The translations under genes and the position numbers were made by a program. Positions 61 to 8,563 of a DNA stretch of 8,710 nt are shown piece by piece. Position 1 is the first letter of the stretch. Every line of letters starts with the position of its first letter. Location: NCBI GenBank assembly GCA_000388065.2, contig KB932206.1; one strand, given 5' to 3'. This DNA is from Fonticula alba ATCC 38817 (taxonomy: Eukaryota; Protista; Nucleariida). The notes beneath the pieces were generated by a model. It had not been told where the DNA came from and made no database searches. It saw only the letters and a list, made by a program, of their open reading frames with translations.

Positions 61-3000
61 CTTCCCCCGCCGAAGAAGCCGGTATCTCAGCCCCAGCAGA
101 TCGCCGCCCGCGCCCCGGCCGCGGTCCCCAATCACCTGTCCTCGCTTGGCCGCAGTGGCTCGGTTCGCTCGATTGACACGGGCGCCGGCATGTCGCGCAC
201 GCCGGTCATGAGGCATCCGCATGAGCTGGTCGACAGCGACCTGGTCGTGCCGATGCTCTCCTTTTCCGTGACCCCCGGCCATGAGACATCCTTCATGCTG
301 AGCTCCGAGAGCCTGGCCCTGGAGGGGTCCCATTCGCAGGCCACCTCGCTGGCCGGCGACACCGGGACACCCCTGTCCTCGTCTTTGCCCCTGTCTGTGG
401 TGGCCTCCTCTTCGCTGGTCGATGATGGCGGGCTGGCGATCGCCGTGGACCGGGCCCCGAAGAAGGGCACGAAGAAGCGCCGAAAGAAGCGCACCCCGAC
501 GGTGCGTGCTCACATGGTGAATGTGTCTCCTCGATCGGGGCCGGCCCTTGCAGCCCCTTGACTGACCTGTGCTTCGTCCTTGGGCAGACCTCCGACTCCC
601 TGCCGCCCCTGCCCGGGAGCCTGCCAGCCGACAGCTCGGTTCCCCTTGCCCGGGCGTCCGTTTCAACGGTGTCCCCCTCACAGCGCACATCCATCCTGAC
701 CGGCGGAACCATCATCAGCCAGGTGGATGAGATTCTGCTGAAGTATGCCGGCGCCAGTGAGCCCGAGGCCGCGGGCTCCGCCCCGGTCACCATGCCGATT
801 GCCATGCCAGGTGCCCCGCAAGCCGGAGCCCCGGCGACCGGGGCCTCCTCATTCACGGGCCCCACGTCCGTGGGCGACTCGCGTTCCGGCACCACCGGGA
901 GCGCCACCACCCCCACAAGGAGGGGCATCCTGTCGGCCACTGTGGTCCCGGCTCCGGGCGAGCCAATGGCCCGGTCAGCAGACTCGACGTTCGGCGTGTC
1001 CCCCCTGTCGTCGGTCGAGTCGTCTGGTGCCGGCGTGGCCCCGGTGCCCGAGAGCAGTCCCGATTCGCCGGCCCTGCTGGTTTCGCTCGATGGGACGACC
1101 GTGGCCGATTGCGAGGCTGCCTCCCTGGCGGCCGGGTCACGGCCACCATCCTCGGTGATGGTGGCCACCATTGGGTCCCCCCTTTCGCCCTCTTCCTCGG
1201 ATGCCGGGTCCCCGTCGGCCGTTCTCGTGTCGGCGATGGGCCCCTGCCCGACGGCCGGCATTGATGCGGTCGACGATGACGAGGGGAATGCCGACGGGAA
1301 CAGCGCCGAGGAGGACGACGATGAGGGGGATGCGGCGGAGGAGGAGGAGGATGATGACGAGGACGAGGACGACGAGGACTACGCCCTGGGCTCCAGCTCC
1401 GACAGTGACTCCTCCATCGACATGATTTCCTCTTCGCCGGTTTTGGTGTTTGTCCCGGCCACGGTGGTCAGCGCCCCGCGGCCGGCGCCCTCGGCCCAGC
1501 TGGCCCAGCTGTCGACCGGGTCCCAGCTCAGCAGTGCCCTGGCCCGCGCGGACCCGGCCAATGGGGCTGTCTTCAGCGCCCAGCAGACACACCCCCACCG
1601 GTCGATCTTCTCCTCGGTTAGCCCACTGGCCGGGTCTCTGGCTGCCAACCTGGCGGATCAGGTCATCAGTCGGTCTCTGAGTTTCACCGGCGATCGGGCC
1701 GCCCGTAAGCGTGCGCATCTCCCTGGGCCTTCTTCTTTTTTTTTTTTTTTTTTTTTCATTTTACACCTACCATTTGCGTCCCCCCCCCCCTCCCTCTCCG
1801 CCTCCCTCACACTTGCCTGACCCGTGTCCCCCTTCCCCGCTGCCGGCAGTCACCGACAAGGATGTCTCGCGTGCCCATTGGATTCCGGACAATGCGCCGG
1901 AGGCAGCCACCTGTCGGGTGGCCTACTGCCACAAGCGCTTCTCGCTGAAGCACCGCCGGCACCACTGCCGCGTGTGCGGGCTGACCGTTTGCACGGACCA
2001 TTCGACCAAGCGCCTGCCGCTGGATCGCCAGGCCCGGTATGATTTGGTTCACGGTGTCAACTGCCGCGTTTGTGATGTCTGCTTCTCCGATGCCAAGTGT
2101 ACGCCCTTTCTCCCCCCCTCCCCCCCCCCCTCCTCCCGCCATCGCGTGCGTTGGTATCAATATCACCTGCTGGCTTGCTCACATGTAACCACCCTAAAGC
2201 TCTTTCACGGCAGCGGCAGACCTCCGAGCTCGGCGACGAACTCCCATCCAGTGCGGTGTGTCTTTCTTCACGGGAACCCCCCCCCCATCATTCCTCTTCT
2301 TTCTTCCCGGGGCCCCCTTTCATCCACCTTCTGGCCTCTTTCGCCACCCACAGACTGCTCTGACATGCTGCCGGTTCGCCCGCCTTCCCTTCCTCTCTCT
2401 CTCTCTCTCTCTCCCTGCCTCCTCTGCCCAAGCTCGCCATCCCCGTGAGCAACCAGCTGGTCAGCTGGCAGAAGGCCGATTTCGGCCGCCTCAGTCTCTC
2501 GGTCTTCGGGCCGGAGTATGTGATGAATCGTCTGCTGTCCTTTGCGCGGATGCCCAATTGCGCGGTTTGCGGATCTACCGTGTCCGTCTCCTCGATCGTG
2601 TCGCTGGTCCAGCAACTGCTCGGTGCCACCGGGCTGACGGAATTCCAGAAGCGCCTCCGCTTGAAGGGGGGACCCACCCGGGATTCGTCCACCGGGTTGG
2701 CGGTTTCGCTGGAGACCAATGGCCTGGAGCCCCCGAGTGGGACATCCCGGGCCTCCTTCACCGGTGGTGGGCTGTCCTCCTCCGGGTCGGGCCCCGGTGG
2801 CCAGCCCCCCGCTGCCACCATCTCCAAGAAGCAATTCACCATGGTGGCCAGCTTCTGCCATGCCACCGGCATGGTCTTTTGCGAGCAGTGCATGCTGCCG
2901 GCCGATGTGACTCCCTGCTTGCCGGGCCCGGCCCTGCTGCACTGGGATTTCCAGGGGCAACCGGTGTCCAAGCACATTGTCCACCTTCTGGAAGCACTTC

Positions 3001-4493
3001 ATGGGTTCCTGGTGGCCGACGACCTGCCGGACCTGCCGAGCCTGGTGGAGCTTTCCACGCCGGCCGGTGGGGAGCTGCTGCGACTGGCCCCTGCCGGGTT
3101 TGGGCAGAATTTCCAAAAGTACAATGTGGCCGAGTGCTTCATCGCCAATGACGAGTGCCCGGAGACCGGGATGATTTACACTTCGCGGTGTAGCCTCTTG
3201 GATGTCGTGCGCCCCGTGCGCCTGGCTGTTGTACGTTGCCTCGCCTCCCTTTGCCAGTGCTCCATTGCATCCCTGCCCATGTGTCTGACATGCATGTGTC
3301 CCTGTGTGTGTGTGTGTGTGTGTGTGTCAATGTGCCCATCACGCTGGCAGCTCATTCGCACTCGACTCCAGCGCCTGCTCGCGCGGATTCACGATTGCCC
3401 GGAGCGCGCAACCAACCCCCTGCTGGATCGACTCATCGACAGCCCCCTGTCCCCGCGGCTGGACCAGCCGGCCACGCTCTTCACCCTGGCCGAATTGGTG
3501 TACCTCAATCGCGGGCAGCTGCTCGACCTGCTGCGAGCCATCACCCTCAAGGCGCACTTGCATGTGGTGGACTGTCACCATTGCTCGGTGGTGGTGGGCG
3601 AGACTTGCCCCCGGTGCTCGCAGCCCCTCCCGGACATCTACTTCCCGCAGGCCGATGGAGATGGGTGCTTCCGTCTTGCCAATACCCGCGACCATGACCC
3701 GGACCAGCCGGCCAGCCAGGAGGATGCCGAGATGGCCTCCTTCCTGGACACGGCCAGCCAGGACTTCACCGACGTGCTGTTGCAATTTGACCGGCCGCCC
3801 TTCCACACGTCGCCGGGGCCCAGCCCGTCGCCGCTGATGGCCGACGGCAGCTCGGCCTCTCCCACTGACTATCGGCCGGCCGCTTGGCGATCGGTCACCT
3901 CGCTTCTGTCAAAGAAAAAGCGCCATGACAGCATGGCCGGCAGTCCGCCCACCAGGACCAGCCTTTCGGAGTCTTCGCGTCCATCGGACAGCCTGGCCAT
4001 CAGCGACGACGCCTCGGACCGGTGGCACTACATCGACGCCGAGGAGTGGGCCGATTTGCCGGAGGTCTTGCAGTCGCTCATGGAGAAGACCCACCGGTCG
4101 GCGGTCACCTGCCCGGGGCTTTGCCGGCGGATGATGCACTCCGAGTGCTATGATGGCCGGCTGGGGTCGTTCATTGCACCGGCCAGCCCCAGCGGTGCCC
4201 GACGTGCCGGTGGTTCCTCTCGTGGGGGGTCCTCCGTTCTGCCGACCCTGACAACCTTGCAGGTGTCCTCCATGGTCTACTCCGCCATGCAGTACGCGTC
4301 GCGCATCAATCCCGGCCACGATGCGCGCACCTCGCGCCTGGAGATCATCGACTACCTGTCCAGCTCAAGCCTGGCCCGGAAAGCCGGGTCCCCGAAGCAC
4401 AGGGGGATTGCCTCCTTCCTCAATGCCCCGGTGCCGGGGTGTCAGTCATGCTCCATGATTGCCTCCATGCTGGAGATGATGCCAGACCAGTGA
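61..4493 (+). CDS. FYVE zinc finger + Rubicon-homology (RH/DUF4206) domain protein, 5'-partial. Predicted exons 61-501, 588-1710 (or 588-1704), 1850-2098, 2200-2255, 2433-3230, 3351-4493; about 1269 aa in the window
   Basis: Acceptor TTGTTCTCAG ends at 60 after a poly-C tract. Exons join in frame through GT-AG introns (total 3810 nt = 1270 codons including TGA 4491-4493). FYVE and RH motifs were recognised by eye. The 2200-2255 mini-exon and the 1705/1711 donor choice are inferred from phase compatibility. Confidence 0.85.
502..587 (+). other. Spliceosomal intron, gene 1 (86 nt, phase 0)
   Basis: GTGCGT donor, CTGAC branch 562-566, GGGCAG acceptor; joins ORFs 43-561 and 558-1820 in frame. 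Confidence 0.85.
1711..1849 (+). other. Spliceosomal intron, gene 1 (phase 1; alternative donor at 1705)
   Basis: GTGCGC (1711) or GTAAGC (1705) donor, T21 and C runs, CTGAC 1817-1821, GGCAG acceptor; either donor joins to the FYVE exon in frame. Confidence 0.8.
1736..1756. repeat. Poly-T run (T21), intronic
   Basis: Read directly. Confidence 0.9.
1879..2085 (+). other. FYVE zinc finger domain (within gene 1)
   Basis: WIPD...CRVAYC..F...RRHHCRVCG..VCTDHS...RVCDVCF contains the WxxD, RRHHCR and RVC signatures that define PI3P-binding FYVE domains. Confidence 0.93.
2099..2199 (+). other. Probable spliceosomal intron, gene 1 (101 nt, phase 1)
   Basis: GTACGC donor right after the FYVE domain; AAG acceptor chosen because it is the phase-compatible one leading into the 2200-2255 exon. 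Confidence 0.55.
2256..2432 (+). other. Probable spliceosomal intron, gene 1 (177 nt, phase 0)
   Basis: GTGTGT donor, CTGAC 2360-2364, (CT)n tract; the first AG after the branch point is AAG 2430-2432; in-frame TGA at 2361 inside the intron. Confidence 0.6.
2393..2413. repeat. (CT)n microsatellite in a polypyrimidine tract
   Basis: About 10 CT units read directly. Confidence 0.9.
3231..3350 (+). other. Spliceosomal intron, gene 1 (120 nt, phase 0, no stop codon)
   Basis: GTACGT donor, (TG)12 microsatellite, GGCAG acceptor; removal gives a clean RH helix (VRPVRLAV|LIRTRLQRLL). Confidence 0.8.
3303..3327. repeat. (TG)12 microsatellite, intronic
   Basis: Read directly; it produces the spurious CVCVCV stretch in the ORF track. 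Confidence 0.95.
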
Positions 4494-4526
4494 AGCGCTG
4501 AGGAGAGGGGCGGGGGGGGGGGGGGG

Positions 4527-4686
4527 NNNNNNNNNNNNNNNNNNNNNNNNNNNNNNNNNNNNNNNNNNNNNNNNNNNNNNNNNNNNNNNNNNNNNNNNNN
4601 NNNNNNNNNNNNNNNNNNNNNNNNNNNNNNNNNNNNNNNNNNNNNNNNNNNNNNNNNNNNNNNNNNNNNNNNNNNNNNNNNNNNNN
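4527..4686. other. Assembly gap (160 N)
   Basis: N run directly after a G-run. Confidence 1.
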
Positions 4687-5435: not shown

Positions 5436-6493
5436 ATGACTTCCTCCTCTGCCCCGATGGACGCCGTCATGGACGCCCCCAGCGCCAAGCGCGTCAAGCT
5501 CTCCCCTTACACGTGCGTGTGCCAGCCCGCTTGCCTCCTGTTCGCCTGGTGCCTCCGCTCGGGCAATTGCCGCCCCTCTTGCGCGTGGAAATGCCTAACA
5601 CCCGGACCGATGATCCCGCAGCAAGGTCAACGCCAACGGCGCCTCCTCCTCCCGGTACCGCTACCACACCGGCTTCGGGTCGCACTTCTCCTCCGAGGCC
5701 CTGCCGGACACCCTGCCCAAGGGGCAGAACTCGCCGCAGGTCTGCCCGCGCGGCCTCTACGCCGAGCAGCTGTCCGGCACGGCCTTCACCAAGCCCCGGA
5801 CCACCGGCAACTTCTTTTCCTGGCTGTACCGCATCCGCCCGTCCGTCGGGCACCGCGGCTACTCGGCCATCAATGCCCCCACCGAGATTGTCGGGGACTT
5901 CTCCTGCTCGACCGTGGCCCTCCCGGTGCCGGACCAGCTCCGCTGGTCGCCCTTCCGCATGCCGGCCGACTCGGAGGCCACGGACTTCATCTCGGGCCTG
6001 AAGTCGGTCGCCGGTGCTGGCTCCGCGTCCGTCCGCAATGGCCTGGCCATCCACGTGTACACGGCCAACCGCTCCATGGAGCGGACCTCCTTCTACAACA
6101 GTGACGGTGATTTCCTGATCGGTGCGACCCCACTCCCGACAGGCGCTTTGCCGTTCGCCGGCCTGCGCTCGCCCCCTTGCGCATGTGCCCCCTCGTCATA
6201 TCCACTGCTCGCCCCCGCCCCCGGCAATTTTCCATTCTCACACCATCTCCCCCCATGGCCGGCCGCTTCGTCGCGCGCAGTCCCCCAGCTCGGTGGTCTC
6301 GACATCCAGACCGAGTTCGGCATGATGGACCTGCTGCCCAACCAGATTGCCGTCATCCCCCGCGGCATTCGCTTCTCGGTCAACCTCCACGACAAGCAGG
6401 CGTACGTTCGACGGTGGCCACCGGCTTCCCTTTGCCCTGTGCCCTGTTGCCTGGTGGTAGTGGTCCCCCCCCTCCCTCCTGACATCCTCCCTT

Positions 6494-6525
<32 letters not shown>

Positions 6526-7545
6526 CCTTTCTCTCTCTCCCCTCTTCGACCCCAGCCGCGGGTATGTTCTCGAGGTCTTCAACGGGCGCTTCGACCTGCC
6601 GGACCTCGGTCCGATCGGTGCCAACGGCCTGGCCAACCCCCGGGACTTCGAGTACCCGATGGCCCACTACGACCAGGATGCCGCCACCAATGTCGCCGCG
6701 CCTGGGCCGGATGGCGCCCCGACCGACGAGTGGTGGCGCGTGGTCACCAAGTTCCAGGGGAAGCTCTTCTCCGCGGCGCAGCCCTTCACCCCGTACGATG
6801 TGGTCGCCTGGCACGGCAACTATGCCCCGTACAAGTATGACCTGGCCAACTTCATGGTCATCAACACGGTCAGCTTCGATCATTGTGTACGTTGCTCTTG
6901 TCTGTTGGATTGCTTGGCCGCCGGTGCCCGGCCCCGGGGCACCGGCTGCCGGCCGCCAGCCCGCTCGTTTGGTGTGCATGCGTGTGCATGTGCTCGCTCC
7001 CACTCACCTGCGACATGTCCGGCCCTTGCCCTCGCACCCACGCACCCACGCACCCACACGCGCAGGATCCCTCCATTTTCACCGTGCTCACTTGCCGGAG
7101 CCTGGAGCCCGGTGTTGCTGTGGCCGATTTCGTCATCTTCCCCCCGCGGTGGGGTGTTGCCGACCACACCTTCCGGCCGCCGTACTACCACCGGAACTGC
7201 ATGTCCGAGTTCATGGGCCTCATCAATGGCGCGTACGAGGCCAAGGCCGGCGGCGAGGAGGACGGCTTCGCCCCGGGTGGCGCGTCCCTGCACAACACCA
7301 TGACCCCCCATGGCCCGGACCGCAACACGTTCATCGCCGCCAGCGATGAGAAGCTCCAGCCCCGGCGTATCGCCGACGGCACCCAGGCCTTCATGTTCGA
7401 GACGCACTTCATGCTCAGCCCCACTCGCTGGGCGCTGGAGCGCTCGGGCGTCGTTCAGCCCCGGTATGTGAGCTGCTGGGAGAACATGCCGGTGCGCTTC
7501 AACCCCGATGGGCTGGAGGCCATCCGCGAGGACTCCTCCGCCTAA
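5436..7545 (+). CDS. HGD: Homogentisate 1,2-dioxygenase (tyrosine catabolism). Exons 5436-5512, 5622-6121, 6281-6401, 6556-6886, 7066-7545; 502 aa from the first ATG (in-frame alternatives at 5457 and 5469)
   Basis: Spliced product contains [145 protein letters not shown] and [14 protein letters not shown]. Fe(II) ligands equivalent to human H335/E341/H371 are at 7189, 7207 and 7309. Exon total is 1509 nt, ending in TAA. Confidence 0.97.
5513..5621 (+). other. HGD intron 1 (109 nt, phase 2)
   Basis: GTGCGT donor, CTAAC 5595-5599, CCGCAG acceptor; restores the frame into the HGD core. Confidence 0.85.
6122..6280 (+). other. HGD intron 2 (159 nt, phase 1)
   Basis: GTGCGA...GCGCAG; removal restores the conserved GDFLIVPQ. 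Confidence 0.95.
6402..6555 (+). other. HGD intron 3 (154 nt, phase 2)
   Basis: GTACGT...(CT)11...CCCCAG; removal restores the conserved ARGYVLEVF. Confidence 0.93.
6499..6520. repeat. (CT)11 microsatellite in HGD intron 3
   Basis: Read directly. Confidence 0.9.
6887..7065 (+). other. HGD intron 4 (179 nt, phase 0)
   Basis: GTACGT...CGCAG; removal restores the conserved FDHC|DPSIFTVLT. Confidence 0.95.
7033..7056 (+). repeat. (CGCACCCA)3 tandem repeat near the 3' end of HGD intron 4
   Basis: Three exact 8-mers. A related CACGCACCCAC lies on the minus strand at 8230-8240, in the presumed intron of gene 3. Confidence 0.85.
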
Positions 7546-7894: not shown

Positions 7895-8118
7895 CTACTC
7901 GGAAGGTGGCCCGGGCTCGGGGGGCGGCACCGGGTCCGAGTGGAGGCGCCGCTTGCGGCCGACCGAGTGCAATTGCCGGGCAAAGGCGTGCGGATCCTCG
8001 ACACCGGACGTGGTGACCGGACTCTGGGTATACATGTCCAGGATGGTGTCTTTGACGGCTTCGGAGTTGACTGTCCGCCGGAAGAGCCCCTCGCGGGAGT
8101 CCTGCGCAAAGTGAGGCA
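7895..8118 (-). CDS. Terminal coding exon of an unidentified gene convergent with HGD (xPHFAQDSREGLFRRTVNSEAVKDTILDMYTQSPVTTSGVEDPHAFARQLHSVGRKRRLHSDPVPPPEPGPPSE*), 5'-partial
   Basis: On the minus strand: branch point GCTAAC (8148-8153), pyrimidine-rich spacer, acceptor CGCAG (AG at 8120-8119), a GC3-rich open frame and stop TAG at 7897-7895. Upstream exons are not resolved (gap at 8220-8229). Confidence 0.6.
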
Positions 8119-8219
8119 CTGCGACGGGCGCGAAGGGGCCGCGAAGGGTTAGCACAGGAGCCAGGGATCGCGCTTGATGGGCAGGTCGGCGGAGTCCCGA
8201 GCCCGGGGGTGGGGGGGGG

Positions 8220-8229
8220 NNNNNNNNNN
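8220..8229. other. Assembly gap (10 N placeholder)
   Basis: N run directly after a G-run. Confidence 1.
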
Positions 8230-8296
8230 GTGGGTGCGTGAGGGCCAGGTGGATCGAGTGTGGTCTGTCTTTGCTCCCTCCGTCCTCTCTTTCCCT

Positions 8297-8336
8297 TGCC
8301 TGCCTGCCTGCCTGCCTGTCTGCCTGCCTGCCTACC
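8297..8336. repeat. (TGCC)n tetranucleotide microsatellite, 10 units with 2 variants
   Basis: Read directly. Confidence 0.9.
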
Positions 8337-8563
8337 TCCGTGTTCCCCCCTTGCTCTCGCCTCTCCGGCGTCCGCCACCTGCCTGGCCCAATGCACTTGT
8401 ATCTTCCCCTTTGCCCATCCTCTTGTGTTCCCTTGTCGTCCTCTGTGCCTCGCGATTGATCGCGTGAAAGGGGGCGGCAAGCGGCTTCCTCTTTCTTTCG
8501 CCCCTTTTTCGCGCCCGGTCCCGGGGGCGCCGCGGCGGACAGAGGGAGGGACCGCGGGCGTGC

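What the first reader, a model, noticed from the sequence alone, without database searches (positions are those of the whole stretch)
1879..4493. FYVE finger fused directly to a Rubicon-homology domain: candidate PI3P/Rab7 coincidence adaptor
Seen: a FYVE domain with all three PI3P signatures is followed about 65 aa later by an RH domain. Known: characterised animal RH proteins pair RH with RUN (Rubicon), RUN plus PH (PLEKHM1), PH (PLEKHM3) or C1 (DEF8), and RH binds Rab7-GTP. I do not recall a characterised protein with a true FYVE next to RH. Inference: a late-endosome/autophagosome adaptor that reads PI3P and Rab7 together, functionally like FYCO1 but built from different parts. It could inform how the Rubicon family evolved outside animals.
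Basis: partly seen in the sequence, partly recalled or inferred. Interest (0 to 1): 0.72.

Follow-up and report, generated by a model that had tools for sequence, protein, structure and literature searches.

The report
RUN–FYVE–Rubicon-homology protein of Fonticula
The FYVE and Rubicon-homology domains are real and sit in one spliced mRNA, but the gene starts upstream of the window with a RUN domain, so this is an uncharacterised, very divergent Rubicon/PLEKHM1-type endosome adaptor of the amoeba Fonticula alba that also carries a true PI3P-type FYVE finger.

Summary
Pfam finds FYVE (49.8 bits, cut-off 27.8) in exon 1850-2098 and RH_dom (51.8-59.5 bits, cut-off 28.1) across exons 2433-3230 and 3351-4493. 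Spliced cDNA contigs from four runs (two samples, one study) join all six window exons, so both domains lie in one transcript.

The gene is public: NCBI hypothetical protein H696_03983 of Fonticula alba, 1550 aa. It begins about 5 kb upstream of the window with a RUN domain (44.7-48.5 bits). The architecture is therefore RUN, long disordered linker, FYVE, RH. That is a Rubicon/PLEKHM1-type frame (RUN + RH) that also has the RUN + FYVE pair of RUFY/FYCO1.

The RH domain is very divergent. It appears to be split by three Ser/Gly/Pro-rich inserts, and its last 37 model positions could not be aligned. An exhaustive phmmer search of 1.84 billion representatives found only the protein itself. No FYVE+RH set appeared among the nearest Atlas clusters or in the literature searched. 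I could not query domain-architecture databases, so rarity is not shown.

Reading PI3P and Rab7 together is a reasonable inference and is untested. I rate it a new variant of a known kind, of moderate interest.

The parts
61..501 (+). Exon coding P0001 residues 282-428, part of the disordered Ser/Pro/Ala-rich linker. An upstream exon is joined at the acceptor AG at 59-60.
   Evidence: cDNA contigs. Exact translation match. No Pfam hit.
502..587 (+). Intron, 86 nt, GT..AG.
   Evidence: Skipped in all four runs.
588..1710 (+). Exon coding residues 429-802, more disordered linker with an acidic D/E run. No PIKBD, PH or C1 domain was detected.
1711..1849 (+). Intron, 139 nt, GT..AG, containing a T run of about 23 bases.
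   Evidence: sequence.
1850..2098 (+). FYVE exon, residues 804-885. The Pfam FYVE match covers about 1876-2091. WIPD is at 1879-1890, RRHHCR at 1954-1971, RVC at 2065-2073.
   Evidence: Pfam 49.8 bits. Vps27 FYVE 47 bits..
2099..2199 (+). Intron, 101 nt, GT..AG.
2200..2255 (+). 56-nt micro-exon coding residues 886-904, a linker.
   Evidence: Present in the cDNA contigs. Exact match to P0001.
2256..2432 (+). Intron, 177 nt, GT..AG, with a (CT)n tract.
   Evidence: The contig pieces 2200-2254 and 2432-3230 are adjacent in each record. The joint row itself was dropped by the tool at a repeat.
2433..3230 (+). Exon with the first half of the RH domain, residues 905-1170. It holds the C-x2-C knuckle (2559-2570), a 94-aa Ser/Gly insert, then the core from about 2853 to 3002 that ends in a WDF motif.
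   Evidence: RH_dom model positions 2-49. The only PDB hit of P0001:1040-1105 is the human Rubicon RH domain, 6wcw_A, chain 43-82, E 0.61.
3231..3350 (+). Intron, 120 nt, in frame, without a stop codon, carrying a (TG)n repeat. If retained it would add 40 aa inside the RH helical stalk.
   Evidence: Spliced out in all four runs. The open reading frame 2445-4493 runs through it.
3351..3647 (+). Second half of the RH domain, residues 1171-1269: the helical stalk, then the knuckles C-x2-C and C-x2-C, then an FP motif.
   Evidence: RH_dom model positions 62-169. Weak collinear hit to 6wcw_A chain 150-208, E 3.3.
3648..4493 (+). C-terminal tail, residues 1270-1550, ending in the stop codon at 4491-4493. 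It has two low-complexity inserts and two Cys clusters: C-x3-C-x4-H-x2-C at 4110-4148 and C-x2-C at 4440-4451. These clusters may be the missing last zinc sites of the RH domain. Two LIR-like motifs, WHYI (4023-4034) and WADL (4047-4058), lie in an acidic context.
   Evidence: All five Cys of the 265-aa tail fall in these two clusters. Random placement gives this pattern at about 0.001, though the pattern was defined after seeing it. No HMM or PDB support.
4494..4511 (+). 3' UTR as far as the cDNA contigs reach. An assembly gap of Ns follows at 4527-4686.

Best explanation
The window holds the 3' two-thirds of one expressed Fonticula alba gene, H696_03983. The annotated model is 1550 aa. The order of parts is: RUN domain (encoded upstream of the window), a disordered linker of about 700 aa, a Vps27-like FYVE finger, and a divergent Rubicon-homology (RH) domain with inserts.

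Shown: the domains, the exon structure, and that one mRNA carries them all.

Inferred from what these families do elsewhere: the FYVE finger binds PI3P. The RH domain binds GTP-loaded Rab7. The RUN domain binds a further small GTPase, as PLEKHM1's RUN domain binds Arl8. The protein would then sit on membranes that carry PI3P and Rab7 together, such as maturing phagosomes, late endosomes and autophagosomes of this bacteria-eating amoeba. There it would act as an adaptor or regulator of fusion with lysosomes. In this reading the FYVE finger fills the lipid-reading slot held by PH domains in PLEKHM1/3 and by C1 in DEF8.
For: - Pfam scores: FYVE 49.8, RH_dom 51.8-59.5, RUN 44.7-48.5 bits, all well above their cut-offs.
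- The FYVE finger has WxxD, RRHHCR and RVC. Its closest solved relative is Vps27, with the same C-x2-H ligand pair.
- The RH halves match human Rubicon RH (6wcw_A) in the right order, though weakly.
- The nearest Atlas clusters are RH families, with scores of 0.90-0.91.
- The RUN domain is closest to those of RUFY3, FYCO1 and PLEKHM1.
- cDNA contigs from four runs join all exons, and each exon matches P0001 exactly.
- The RH-Rab7-GTP mechanism comes from PMC7382272.
Against: - No binding was tested.
- The RH domain is so divergent that phmmer against 1.84 billion representatives found only the protein itself.
- RH model positions 170-206 are not aligned. These cover the last zinc sites and the C-terminal helix, which in Rubicon supplies Arg contacts to Rab7. 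The candidate terminal helix here has no Arg (sequence).
- The first FYVE knuckle is C-x4-C, not the usual C-x2-C.
- The single-sequence AlphaFold model was unusable, with mean pLDDT 34.
- The first 84 or so RUN residues are missing from the model, which starts directly after a 901-N gap.
Confidence: 0.55

Rival explanations
1. The RH domain has decayed. With three large inserts and an unalignable C-terminal third, it no longer binds Rab7. The protein would then work as a RUFY/FYCO1-like RUN+FYVE endosomal adaptor with a cysteine-rich tail of other or no function.
For: RH_dom covers only model positions 2-49 and 62-169 of 206. The tail gives no HMM or PDB hit. No relative was detectable by pairwise search. 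The RUN domain is closest to RUFY3 and FYCO1.
Against: The RH score is about twice the Pfam cut-off. The tail keeps all its cysteines in two zinc-knuckle-like clusters. The reading frame is intact and expressed. The inserts are low-complexity loops of a kind that earlier scan notes report in other proteins of this genome.
Confidence: 0.2
2. It is the Fonticula orthologue of Rubicon proper, a regulator of the VPS34 PI3-kinase complex. The Beclin/UVRAG-binding segment would be hidden in the disordered linker. The FYVE finger would sense the kinase's product, PI3P, as feedback.
For: The RUN ... RH frame is that of Rubicon. One of the nearest Atlas clusters carries RH_dom together with RUBC_PIKBD.
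Against: No PF21054 RUBC_PIKBD hit at E up to 1, either on the linker exons or on the whole protein. The RUN domain is closer to RUFY3, FYCO1 and PLEKHM1 than to anything called Rubicon in the PDB search. No phylogeny was possible.
Confidence: 0.15
3. It is a gene-model artefact: two neighbouring genes, one with FYVE and one with RH, merged by annotation or misassembly.
For: The scaffold is full of N gaps: three within or beside the gene's upstream part and one just after its 3' end. The annotated model also includes a 231-nt exon that the cDNA contigs skip.
Against: Single cDNA contigs of 4.4-4.9 kb in four runs span from upstream of the window, through the FYVE exon and both RH exons, to the stop codon. 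All five introns are removed at GT..AG and there are no mismatches.
Confidence: 0.03

Closest known systems
Rubicon (RUBCN), human; RH-Rab7 structure 6WCW
   Same: N-terminal RUN domain, long disordered middle and C-terminal RH domain. The RH core motifs (the Cys-rich start through the WDF motif, the helical stalk, and the paired C-x2-C knuckles followed by FP) align in the right order.
   Different: Rubicon has a PI3K-binding domain (PIKBD), which was not detected here. It has no true FYVE: its FYVE-like zinc cluster 1 lacks the basic PI3P residues (PMC7382272) and is reported not to bind PI3P (PMC7431699). The Fonticula protein has a canonical FYVE in addition, and three large inserts in the RH domain.
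PLEKHM1 / PLEKHM3 / DEF8
   Same: An RH domain paired with a membrane- or lipid-reading module. PLEKHM1 also has an N-terminal RUN domain, which is among the solved relatives of this protein's RUN domain.
   Different: Their lipid modules are PH or C1 domains, not FYVE. No PH or C1 hit was found here.
RUFY1-4 and FYCO1 (RUN + FYVE adaptors)
   Same: RUN and a PI3P-type FYVE in one protein. The RUN domain is closest to RUFY3 (27.7 bits) and FYCO1 (25.5 bits).
   Different: In those proteins a coiled coil separates the domains, and the FYVE is at or near the C-terminus (FYCO1 adds LIR and GOLD). They have no RH domain. A review states that rufy genes are absent from fungi and arose in animals (PMC7431699). 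Fonticula is a relative of fungi.
Plant PX + RH (DUF4206) proteins (recalled from memory, not checked here)
   Same: A PI3P-reading module (PX) fused to an RH domain. That would be the same logic built with a different lipid reader.
   Different: PX instead of FYVE, and as far as I recall no RUN domain. I could not verify this with the tools (searches found nothing).

Membership tests
FYVE zinc finger (PF01363) | Score above the Pfam gathering cut-off | tested here: met
   49.8 bits on the exon and 42.4 bits on P0001, against a cut-off of 27.8.
FYVE zinc finger (PF01363) | The three PI3P-binding signatures: WxxD, R(R/K)HHCR and RVC | tested here: met
   WIPD at residue 813, RRHHCR at 838, RVC at 875. 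They align to Vps27, Hrs and EEA1.
FYVE zinc finger (PF01363) | Eight zinc ligands in four pairs with canonical spacing | tested here: inconclusive
   Seven Cys plus one His (C-x2-H, as in Vps27) are present. The first pair is C-x4-C instead of C-x2-C, a two-residue insert in the alignment.
FYVE zinc finger (PF01363) | Binds PI3P | not testable with these tools
   Needs a liposome or lipid-strip assay.
Rubicon homology domain (PF13901) | Score above the Pfam gathering cut-off | tested here: met
   56.4, 51.8 and 59.5 bits against a cut-off of 28.1.
Rubicon homology domain (PF13901) | Full-length domain with all zinc sites (nine conserved Cys and one His; four zinc clusters, PMC7382272) | tested here: inconclusive
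   Model positions 2-49 and 62-169 of 206 are aligned. The last 37 are not, and the tail pieces give no hit. Candidate ligands exist in the tail at C1424, C1428, H1433, C1436, C1534 and C1537.
Rubicon homology domain (PF13901) | RH fold (L-shaped, four zinc clusters) | tested here: inconclusive
   The single-sequence AlphaFold2 model had mean pLDDT 34 and was unusable, so no fold search was run.
Rubicon homology domain (PF13901) | Binds Rab7-GTP | not testable with these tools
   Needs a pull-down, or a complex prediction built on a deep alignment.
Rubicon (RUBCN) orthologue | RUN domain at the N-terminus | tested here: met
   PF02759 at 44.7-48.5 bits against a cut-off of 22. Only model positions 44-130 are present, because the gene model starts directly after an N gap.
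Rubicon (RUBCN) orthologue | PI3K-binding domain (PF21054 RUBC_PIKBD) | tested here: not met
   No hit at E up to 1 on the linker exons or the whole protein.
PLEKHM1-type | PH domains between RUN and RH | tested here: not met
   No PH hit.
RUFY/FYCO1-type | RUN plus a PI3P-type FYVE | tested here: met
RUFY/FYCO1-type | Coiled coil between the domains, and FYVE as the last zinc domain (no RH) | tested here: not met
   An RH domain follows the FYVE. The linker is Ser/Pro/Ala-rich low complexity. No coiled-coil predictor was run.

The most novel reading that the evidence does not exclude
RUN-FYVE-RH is a three-part architecture that has not been described. Found in a sister lineage of fungi, it could be a survivor of an ancestral opisthokont adaptor. 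Two animal families would then have arisen from it by losing one module each: RUN+FYVE (RUFY/FYCO1) and RUN+RH (Rubicon/PLEKHM1). Alternatively it is an independent invention of a PI3P-plus-Rab7 coincidence reader, perhaps tied to this organism's reported Leu67 Rab7.
Probability: 0.12. Interest if true: 0.65.

Novelty: new variant of a known kind. Interest (0 to 1): 0.42.

Why it matters
RH proteins (Rubicon, PLEKHM1, Pacer) control late steps of autophagy, phagocytosis and endosome-lysosome fusion, and they have mostly been studied in animals. A protein outside animals and fungi that joins RUN, a canonical PI3P-reading FYVE and an RH domain would have three uses:

- It would give a natural test of whether RH domains are generally paired with a lipid reader for coincidence detection.
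- It would bear on how the RUFY/FYCO1 and Rubicon/PLEKHM1 families are related.
- It would offer a way into phagosome maturation in a bacteria-eating relative of fungi.

The value is limited. The protein is already in public databases as an unnamed prediction, domain shuffling of this kind is common, and nothing about its function has been tested.

Tried and rejected
- **Word-based homologue searches.** I ran three: the RH region in the 377-1200 aa class, FYVE+RH, and RH alone in the 852-2712 aa class. They returned only the protein itself, plus two unrelated FYVE proteins (a Fab1-like protein and a RhoGEF-PH protein).
- **Exhaustive phmmer.** The 686-aa C-terminal reading frame against 1.84 billion representatives hit only itself. 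No alignment, phylogeny or architecture survey could therefore be built.
- **Structure prediction.** AlphaFold2 on P0001:800-1290 without an alignment gave mean pLDDT 34. I ran no fold search on it, because a poor model gives meaningless matches.
- **Pfam and PDB on the tail.** Scans of residues 1385-1550 and 1412-1450 gave nothing. P0001:1236-1285 against the PDB gave only chance hits.
- **Cassette exon as the missing RUN part.** I tested whether the 231-nt upstream exon (P0001 residues 205-281) is the missing N-terminal part of RUN. There was no Pfam hit, so I rejected the idea.
- **Upstream exons.** I looked upstream of the model's start in L001:3500-6000. There was nothing before the 901-N gap.
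- **Paper searches.** Searches for DUF4206, PF13901, RH-domain evolution and Fonticula autophagy were unproductive.
  - I sent no joined exon model to any search. Exons were searched by reference, and the full-length sequence used was the database protein P0001.
  - I did not type the human Rubicon C-terminal sequence from memory into any tool. The mapping of the tail knuckles onto Rubicon's last zinc sites is therefore recollection plus inference only.
Full report
**What is in the window**

The window is GC-rich eukaryotic DNA, about 65% GC, with homopolymer runs and N gaps. On the + strand, Pfam recognises two domains:
- A FYVE finger in window:1849-2097: PF01363, 49.8 bits, E 3.6e-13, cut-off 27.8.
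- A Rubicon homology domain in the open frame 2433-4490: PF13901, 56.4 bits, cut-off 28.1. It matches in two stretches, model positions 2-49 and 74-169.

The FYVE exon reads WIPD, RRHHCR and RVC at the expected places. Its best solved relative is the PI3P-binding FYVE of yeast Vps27 (1vfy, 47 bits), followed by Hrs, EEA1, WDFY3 and RUFY1. Like Vps27, it has C-x2-H as the third ligand pair. One oddity is a two-residue insert in the first knuckle, which is C-x4-C rather than C-x2-C.

**One gene, one transcript**

Four small runs from 2012 hold 78% of the sampled words of this stretch. They come from two samples in one study and are labelled only as 'RNA?'. Laid on window:34-4526, each run gives one contig of 4.4-4.9 kb with no mismatches. 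These contigs lack exactly five segments, each bounded by GT..AG: 502-587, 1711-1849, 2099-2199, 2256-2432 and 3231-3350. They are therefore cDNA.

The exons are 61-501, 588-1710, 1850-2098 (FYVE), 2200-2255, 2433-3230 and 3351-4493 (RH and tail), with 3' UTR to at least 4511. The intron at 3231-3350 is 120 nt, in frame and without a stop. That is why a single 682-codon open frame runs through it. The contigs also extend 609-1039 nt upstream of window position 60, so the gene begins outside the window.

**The full protein**

The word-index search with the RH region found nothing. The exhaustive phmmer search of the 686-residue reading frame against 1.84 billion representatives found exactly one protein, at 100% identity: P0001, 1550 aa. 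A later search names it 'hypothetical protein H696_03983 [Fonticula alba]' at NCBI and 'FYVE-type domain-containing protein' in UniRef. Its precomputed Pfam domains are PF02759, PF01363 and PF13901.

The protein is encoded on scaffold KB932206.1 of GCA_000388065.2, and the window equals locus L001 shifted by 11174. Each of the six window exons translates to an exact substring of P0001: residues 282-428, 429-802, 804-885, 887-904, 905-1170 and 1171-1550. I did not send a joined exon model to any search. The exons were searched by reference, and the full-length sequence used was this database protein.

Pfam on P0001 gives RUN (44.7 bits, or 48.5 on residues 1-210; cut-off 22; residues 4-88 matching model positions 44-130), FYVE (residues 813-884) and RH_dom. 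The closest solved RUN domains are RPIPx/RUFY3 (27.7 bits), FYCO1 (25.5) and PLEKHM1 (22.7). Query residue 3 aligns to chain position 85. The annotated start codon lies directly after a 901-N gap. Together these suggest the first 84 or so RUN residues are hidden in the gap. Nothing RUN-like lies before the gap.

**Architecture**

The order is RUN, a short Cys-rich stretch, a Ser/Pro/Ala-rich acidic linker of about 600-700 aa with no Pfam hit, FYVE, then RH.
- It has the RUN ... RH frame of Rubicon and PLEKHM1.
- It has the RUN + FYVE pair of RUFY1-4 and FYCO1.
- No PIKBD, PH or C1 domain was detected. It is therefore not a strict member of the Rubicon, PLEKHM1 or DEF8 subfamilies.

**How good is the RH domain?**

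The score is about twice the cut-off, at 59.5 bits on residues 1030-1290. When residues 1040-1105 are searched against all PDB sequences at E up to 10, the only hit is the human Rubicon RH domain (6wcw_A, chain 43-82, E 0.61). The alignment pairs the Cys-rich core and the WDF motif. Residues 1205-1285 hit the same chain further along (150-208, E 3.3), so the two hits are collinear. Each hit is weak on its own. The nearest ESM-Atlas clusters to residues 930-1290 are RH families, with scores of 0.90-0.91 and 187-190 shared features.

Against this, model positions 170-206 do not align. In Rubicon these cover the last zinc sites and the C-terminal helix, whose arginines touch Rab7 (PMC7382272). 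The domain appears to be cut by three low-complexity inserts, at residues 951-1044, 1277-1422 and 1437-1532. The 265-residue tail has only five cysteines, and all of them fall in two knuckle-like clusters: C-x3-C-x4-H-x2-C at 1424-1436 and C-x2-C at 1534-1537. Random placement gives such a pattern about once in a thousand, but I defined the pattern after seeing it.

From my memory of the human Rubicon C-terminus, these clusters match its last zinc ligands. That sequence has no reference here, so I did not type it into a tool, and this step is recollection only. The tail pieces gave no HMM or PDB hit. The single-sequence AlphaFold2 model was useless, with mean pLDDT 34, so the fold was not tested.

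**Is FYVE + RH known or common?**

I could not answer this properly. The protein is too divergent for pairwise searches to collect RH relatives, so no architecture table or tree could be made.

The indirect evidence is as follows:
- Among the 30 nearest named Atlas clusters, the family sets were RH alone, RH + RUBC_PIKBD, RH + C1 and FYVE alone. None combined FYVE and RH.
- Papers that mention both terms refer only to Rubicon's own FYVE-like zinc cluster 1. That cluster lacks the basic PI3P residues (PMC7382272) and is reported not to bind PI3P (PMC7431699).
- The RUFY review states that RUN+FYVE genes are absent from fungi and arose in animals. A RUN+FYVE protein in a fungal sister lineage does not sit easily with that statement.

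From memory only, plants have PX + RH proteins, which would be the same 'PI3P reader + RH' logic. I could not confirm this.

**Mechanism**

What is shown: the three domains, their order, and expression as one mRNA.

What is inferred:
- FYVE binds PI3P. The signature motifs are intact, but the first knuckle is unusual.
- RH binds Rab7-GTP, by family precedent. The contact residues could not be aligned.
- RUN binds another small GTPase.

The most likely role is an adaptor or regulator on membranes that are positive for both PI3P and Rab7: maturing phagosomes, late endosomes and autophagosomes. Here FYVE would take the slot that PH or C1 modules hold in other RH proteins.

Two tryptophan motifs in an acidic stretch of the second insert look like Atg8-binding LIRs: WHYI at residue 1395 and WADL at 1403. 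Such motifs are common by chance and were not tested. If that is true, a second input such as PI3P could matter more for timing. I did not check that note.

**Verdict**

The protein is already in public databases as an unnamed prediction. I rate it a new variant of a known kind, of moderate interest.

Noticed in passing
L001:9743-9973 (upstream of the window; P0001 residues 205-281): The annotated model includes a 231-nt in-frame exon with good splice sites. The cDNA contigs of all four runs skip it. The loose end before window position 60 translates to ...AVCRNDVLSW, joined directly to LPPPKK. This is either a cassette exon or an annotation error. It has no Pfam hit.
   Followed up: partly
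L001:6165-6448 (upstream of the window, inside the RUN-coding part of the same gene): A perfect or nearly perfect tandem duplication of 142 nt (100% and 99% identity). It holds the micro-exon for P0001 residues of about 44-50.
   Followed up: partly
L001:5066-5966, 7309-9528, 10123-11174; window 4527-4686 and 8220-8229: Large N gaps flanked by long C or G homopolymers lie inside and around the gene. The window's first 33 bases are a C run directly after a 1052-N gap. The annotated start codon directly follows a 901-N gap, so the N-terminus of the RUN domain is probably missing from the assembly.
   Followed up: partly
window 3231-3350: A 120-nt intron that is in frame and stop-free, with a (TG)n microsatellite. 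If retained it would insert 40 residues into the RH helical stalk. It is spliced out in all cDNA contigs seen.
   Followed up: yes
window 4023-4058: Two adjacent LIR-like motifs, WHYI and WADL, flanked by acidic residues. They lie in a disordered insert of the RH region and are possible Atg8-binding sites. They are weak evidence on their own.
   Followed up: no
window 5436-7545 (+): The neighbouring gene is a multi-exon homogentisate 1,2-dioxygenase of 502 aa, with Pfam HgmA_N and HgmA_C in the precomputed annotation.
   Followed up: no
window 7895-8418 (-): A small annotated gene of 81 aa without any Pfam hit on record.
   Followed up: no
window 1325-2137: Short contig pieces of 22-26 nt from highly expressed unrelated contigs (depth 99-142) land on the C-rich tract at 2112-2137 and give spurious 'joints' at 1325/1497 to 2112/2114. 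These are low-complexity artefacts, not splicing.
   Followed up: partly
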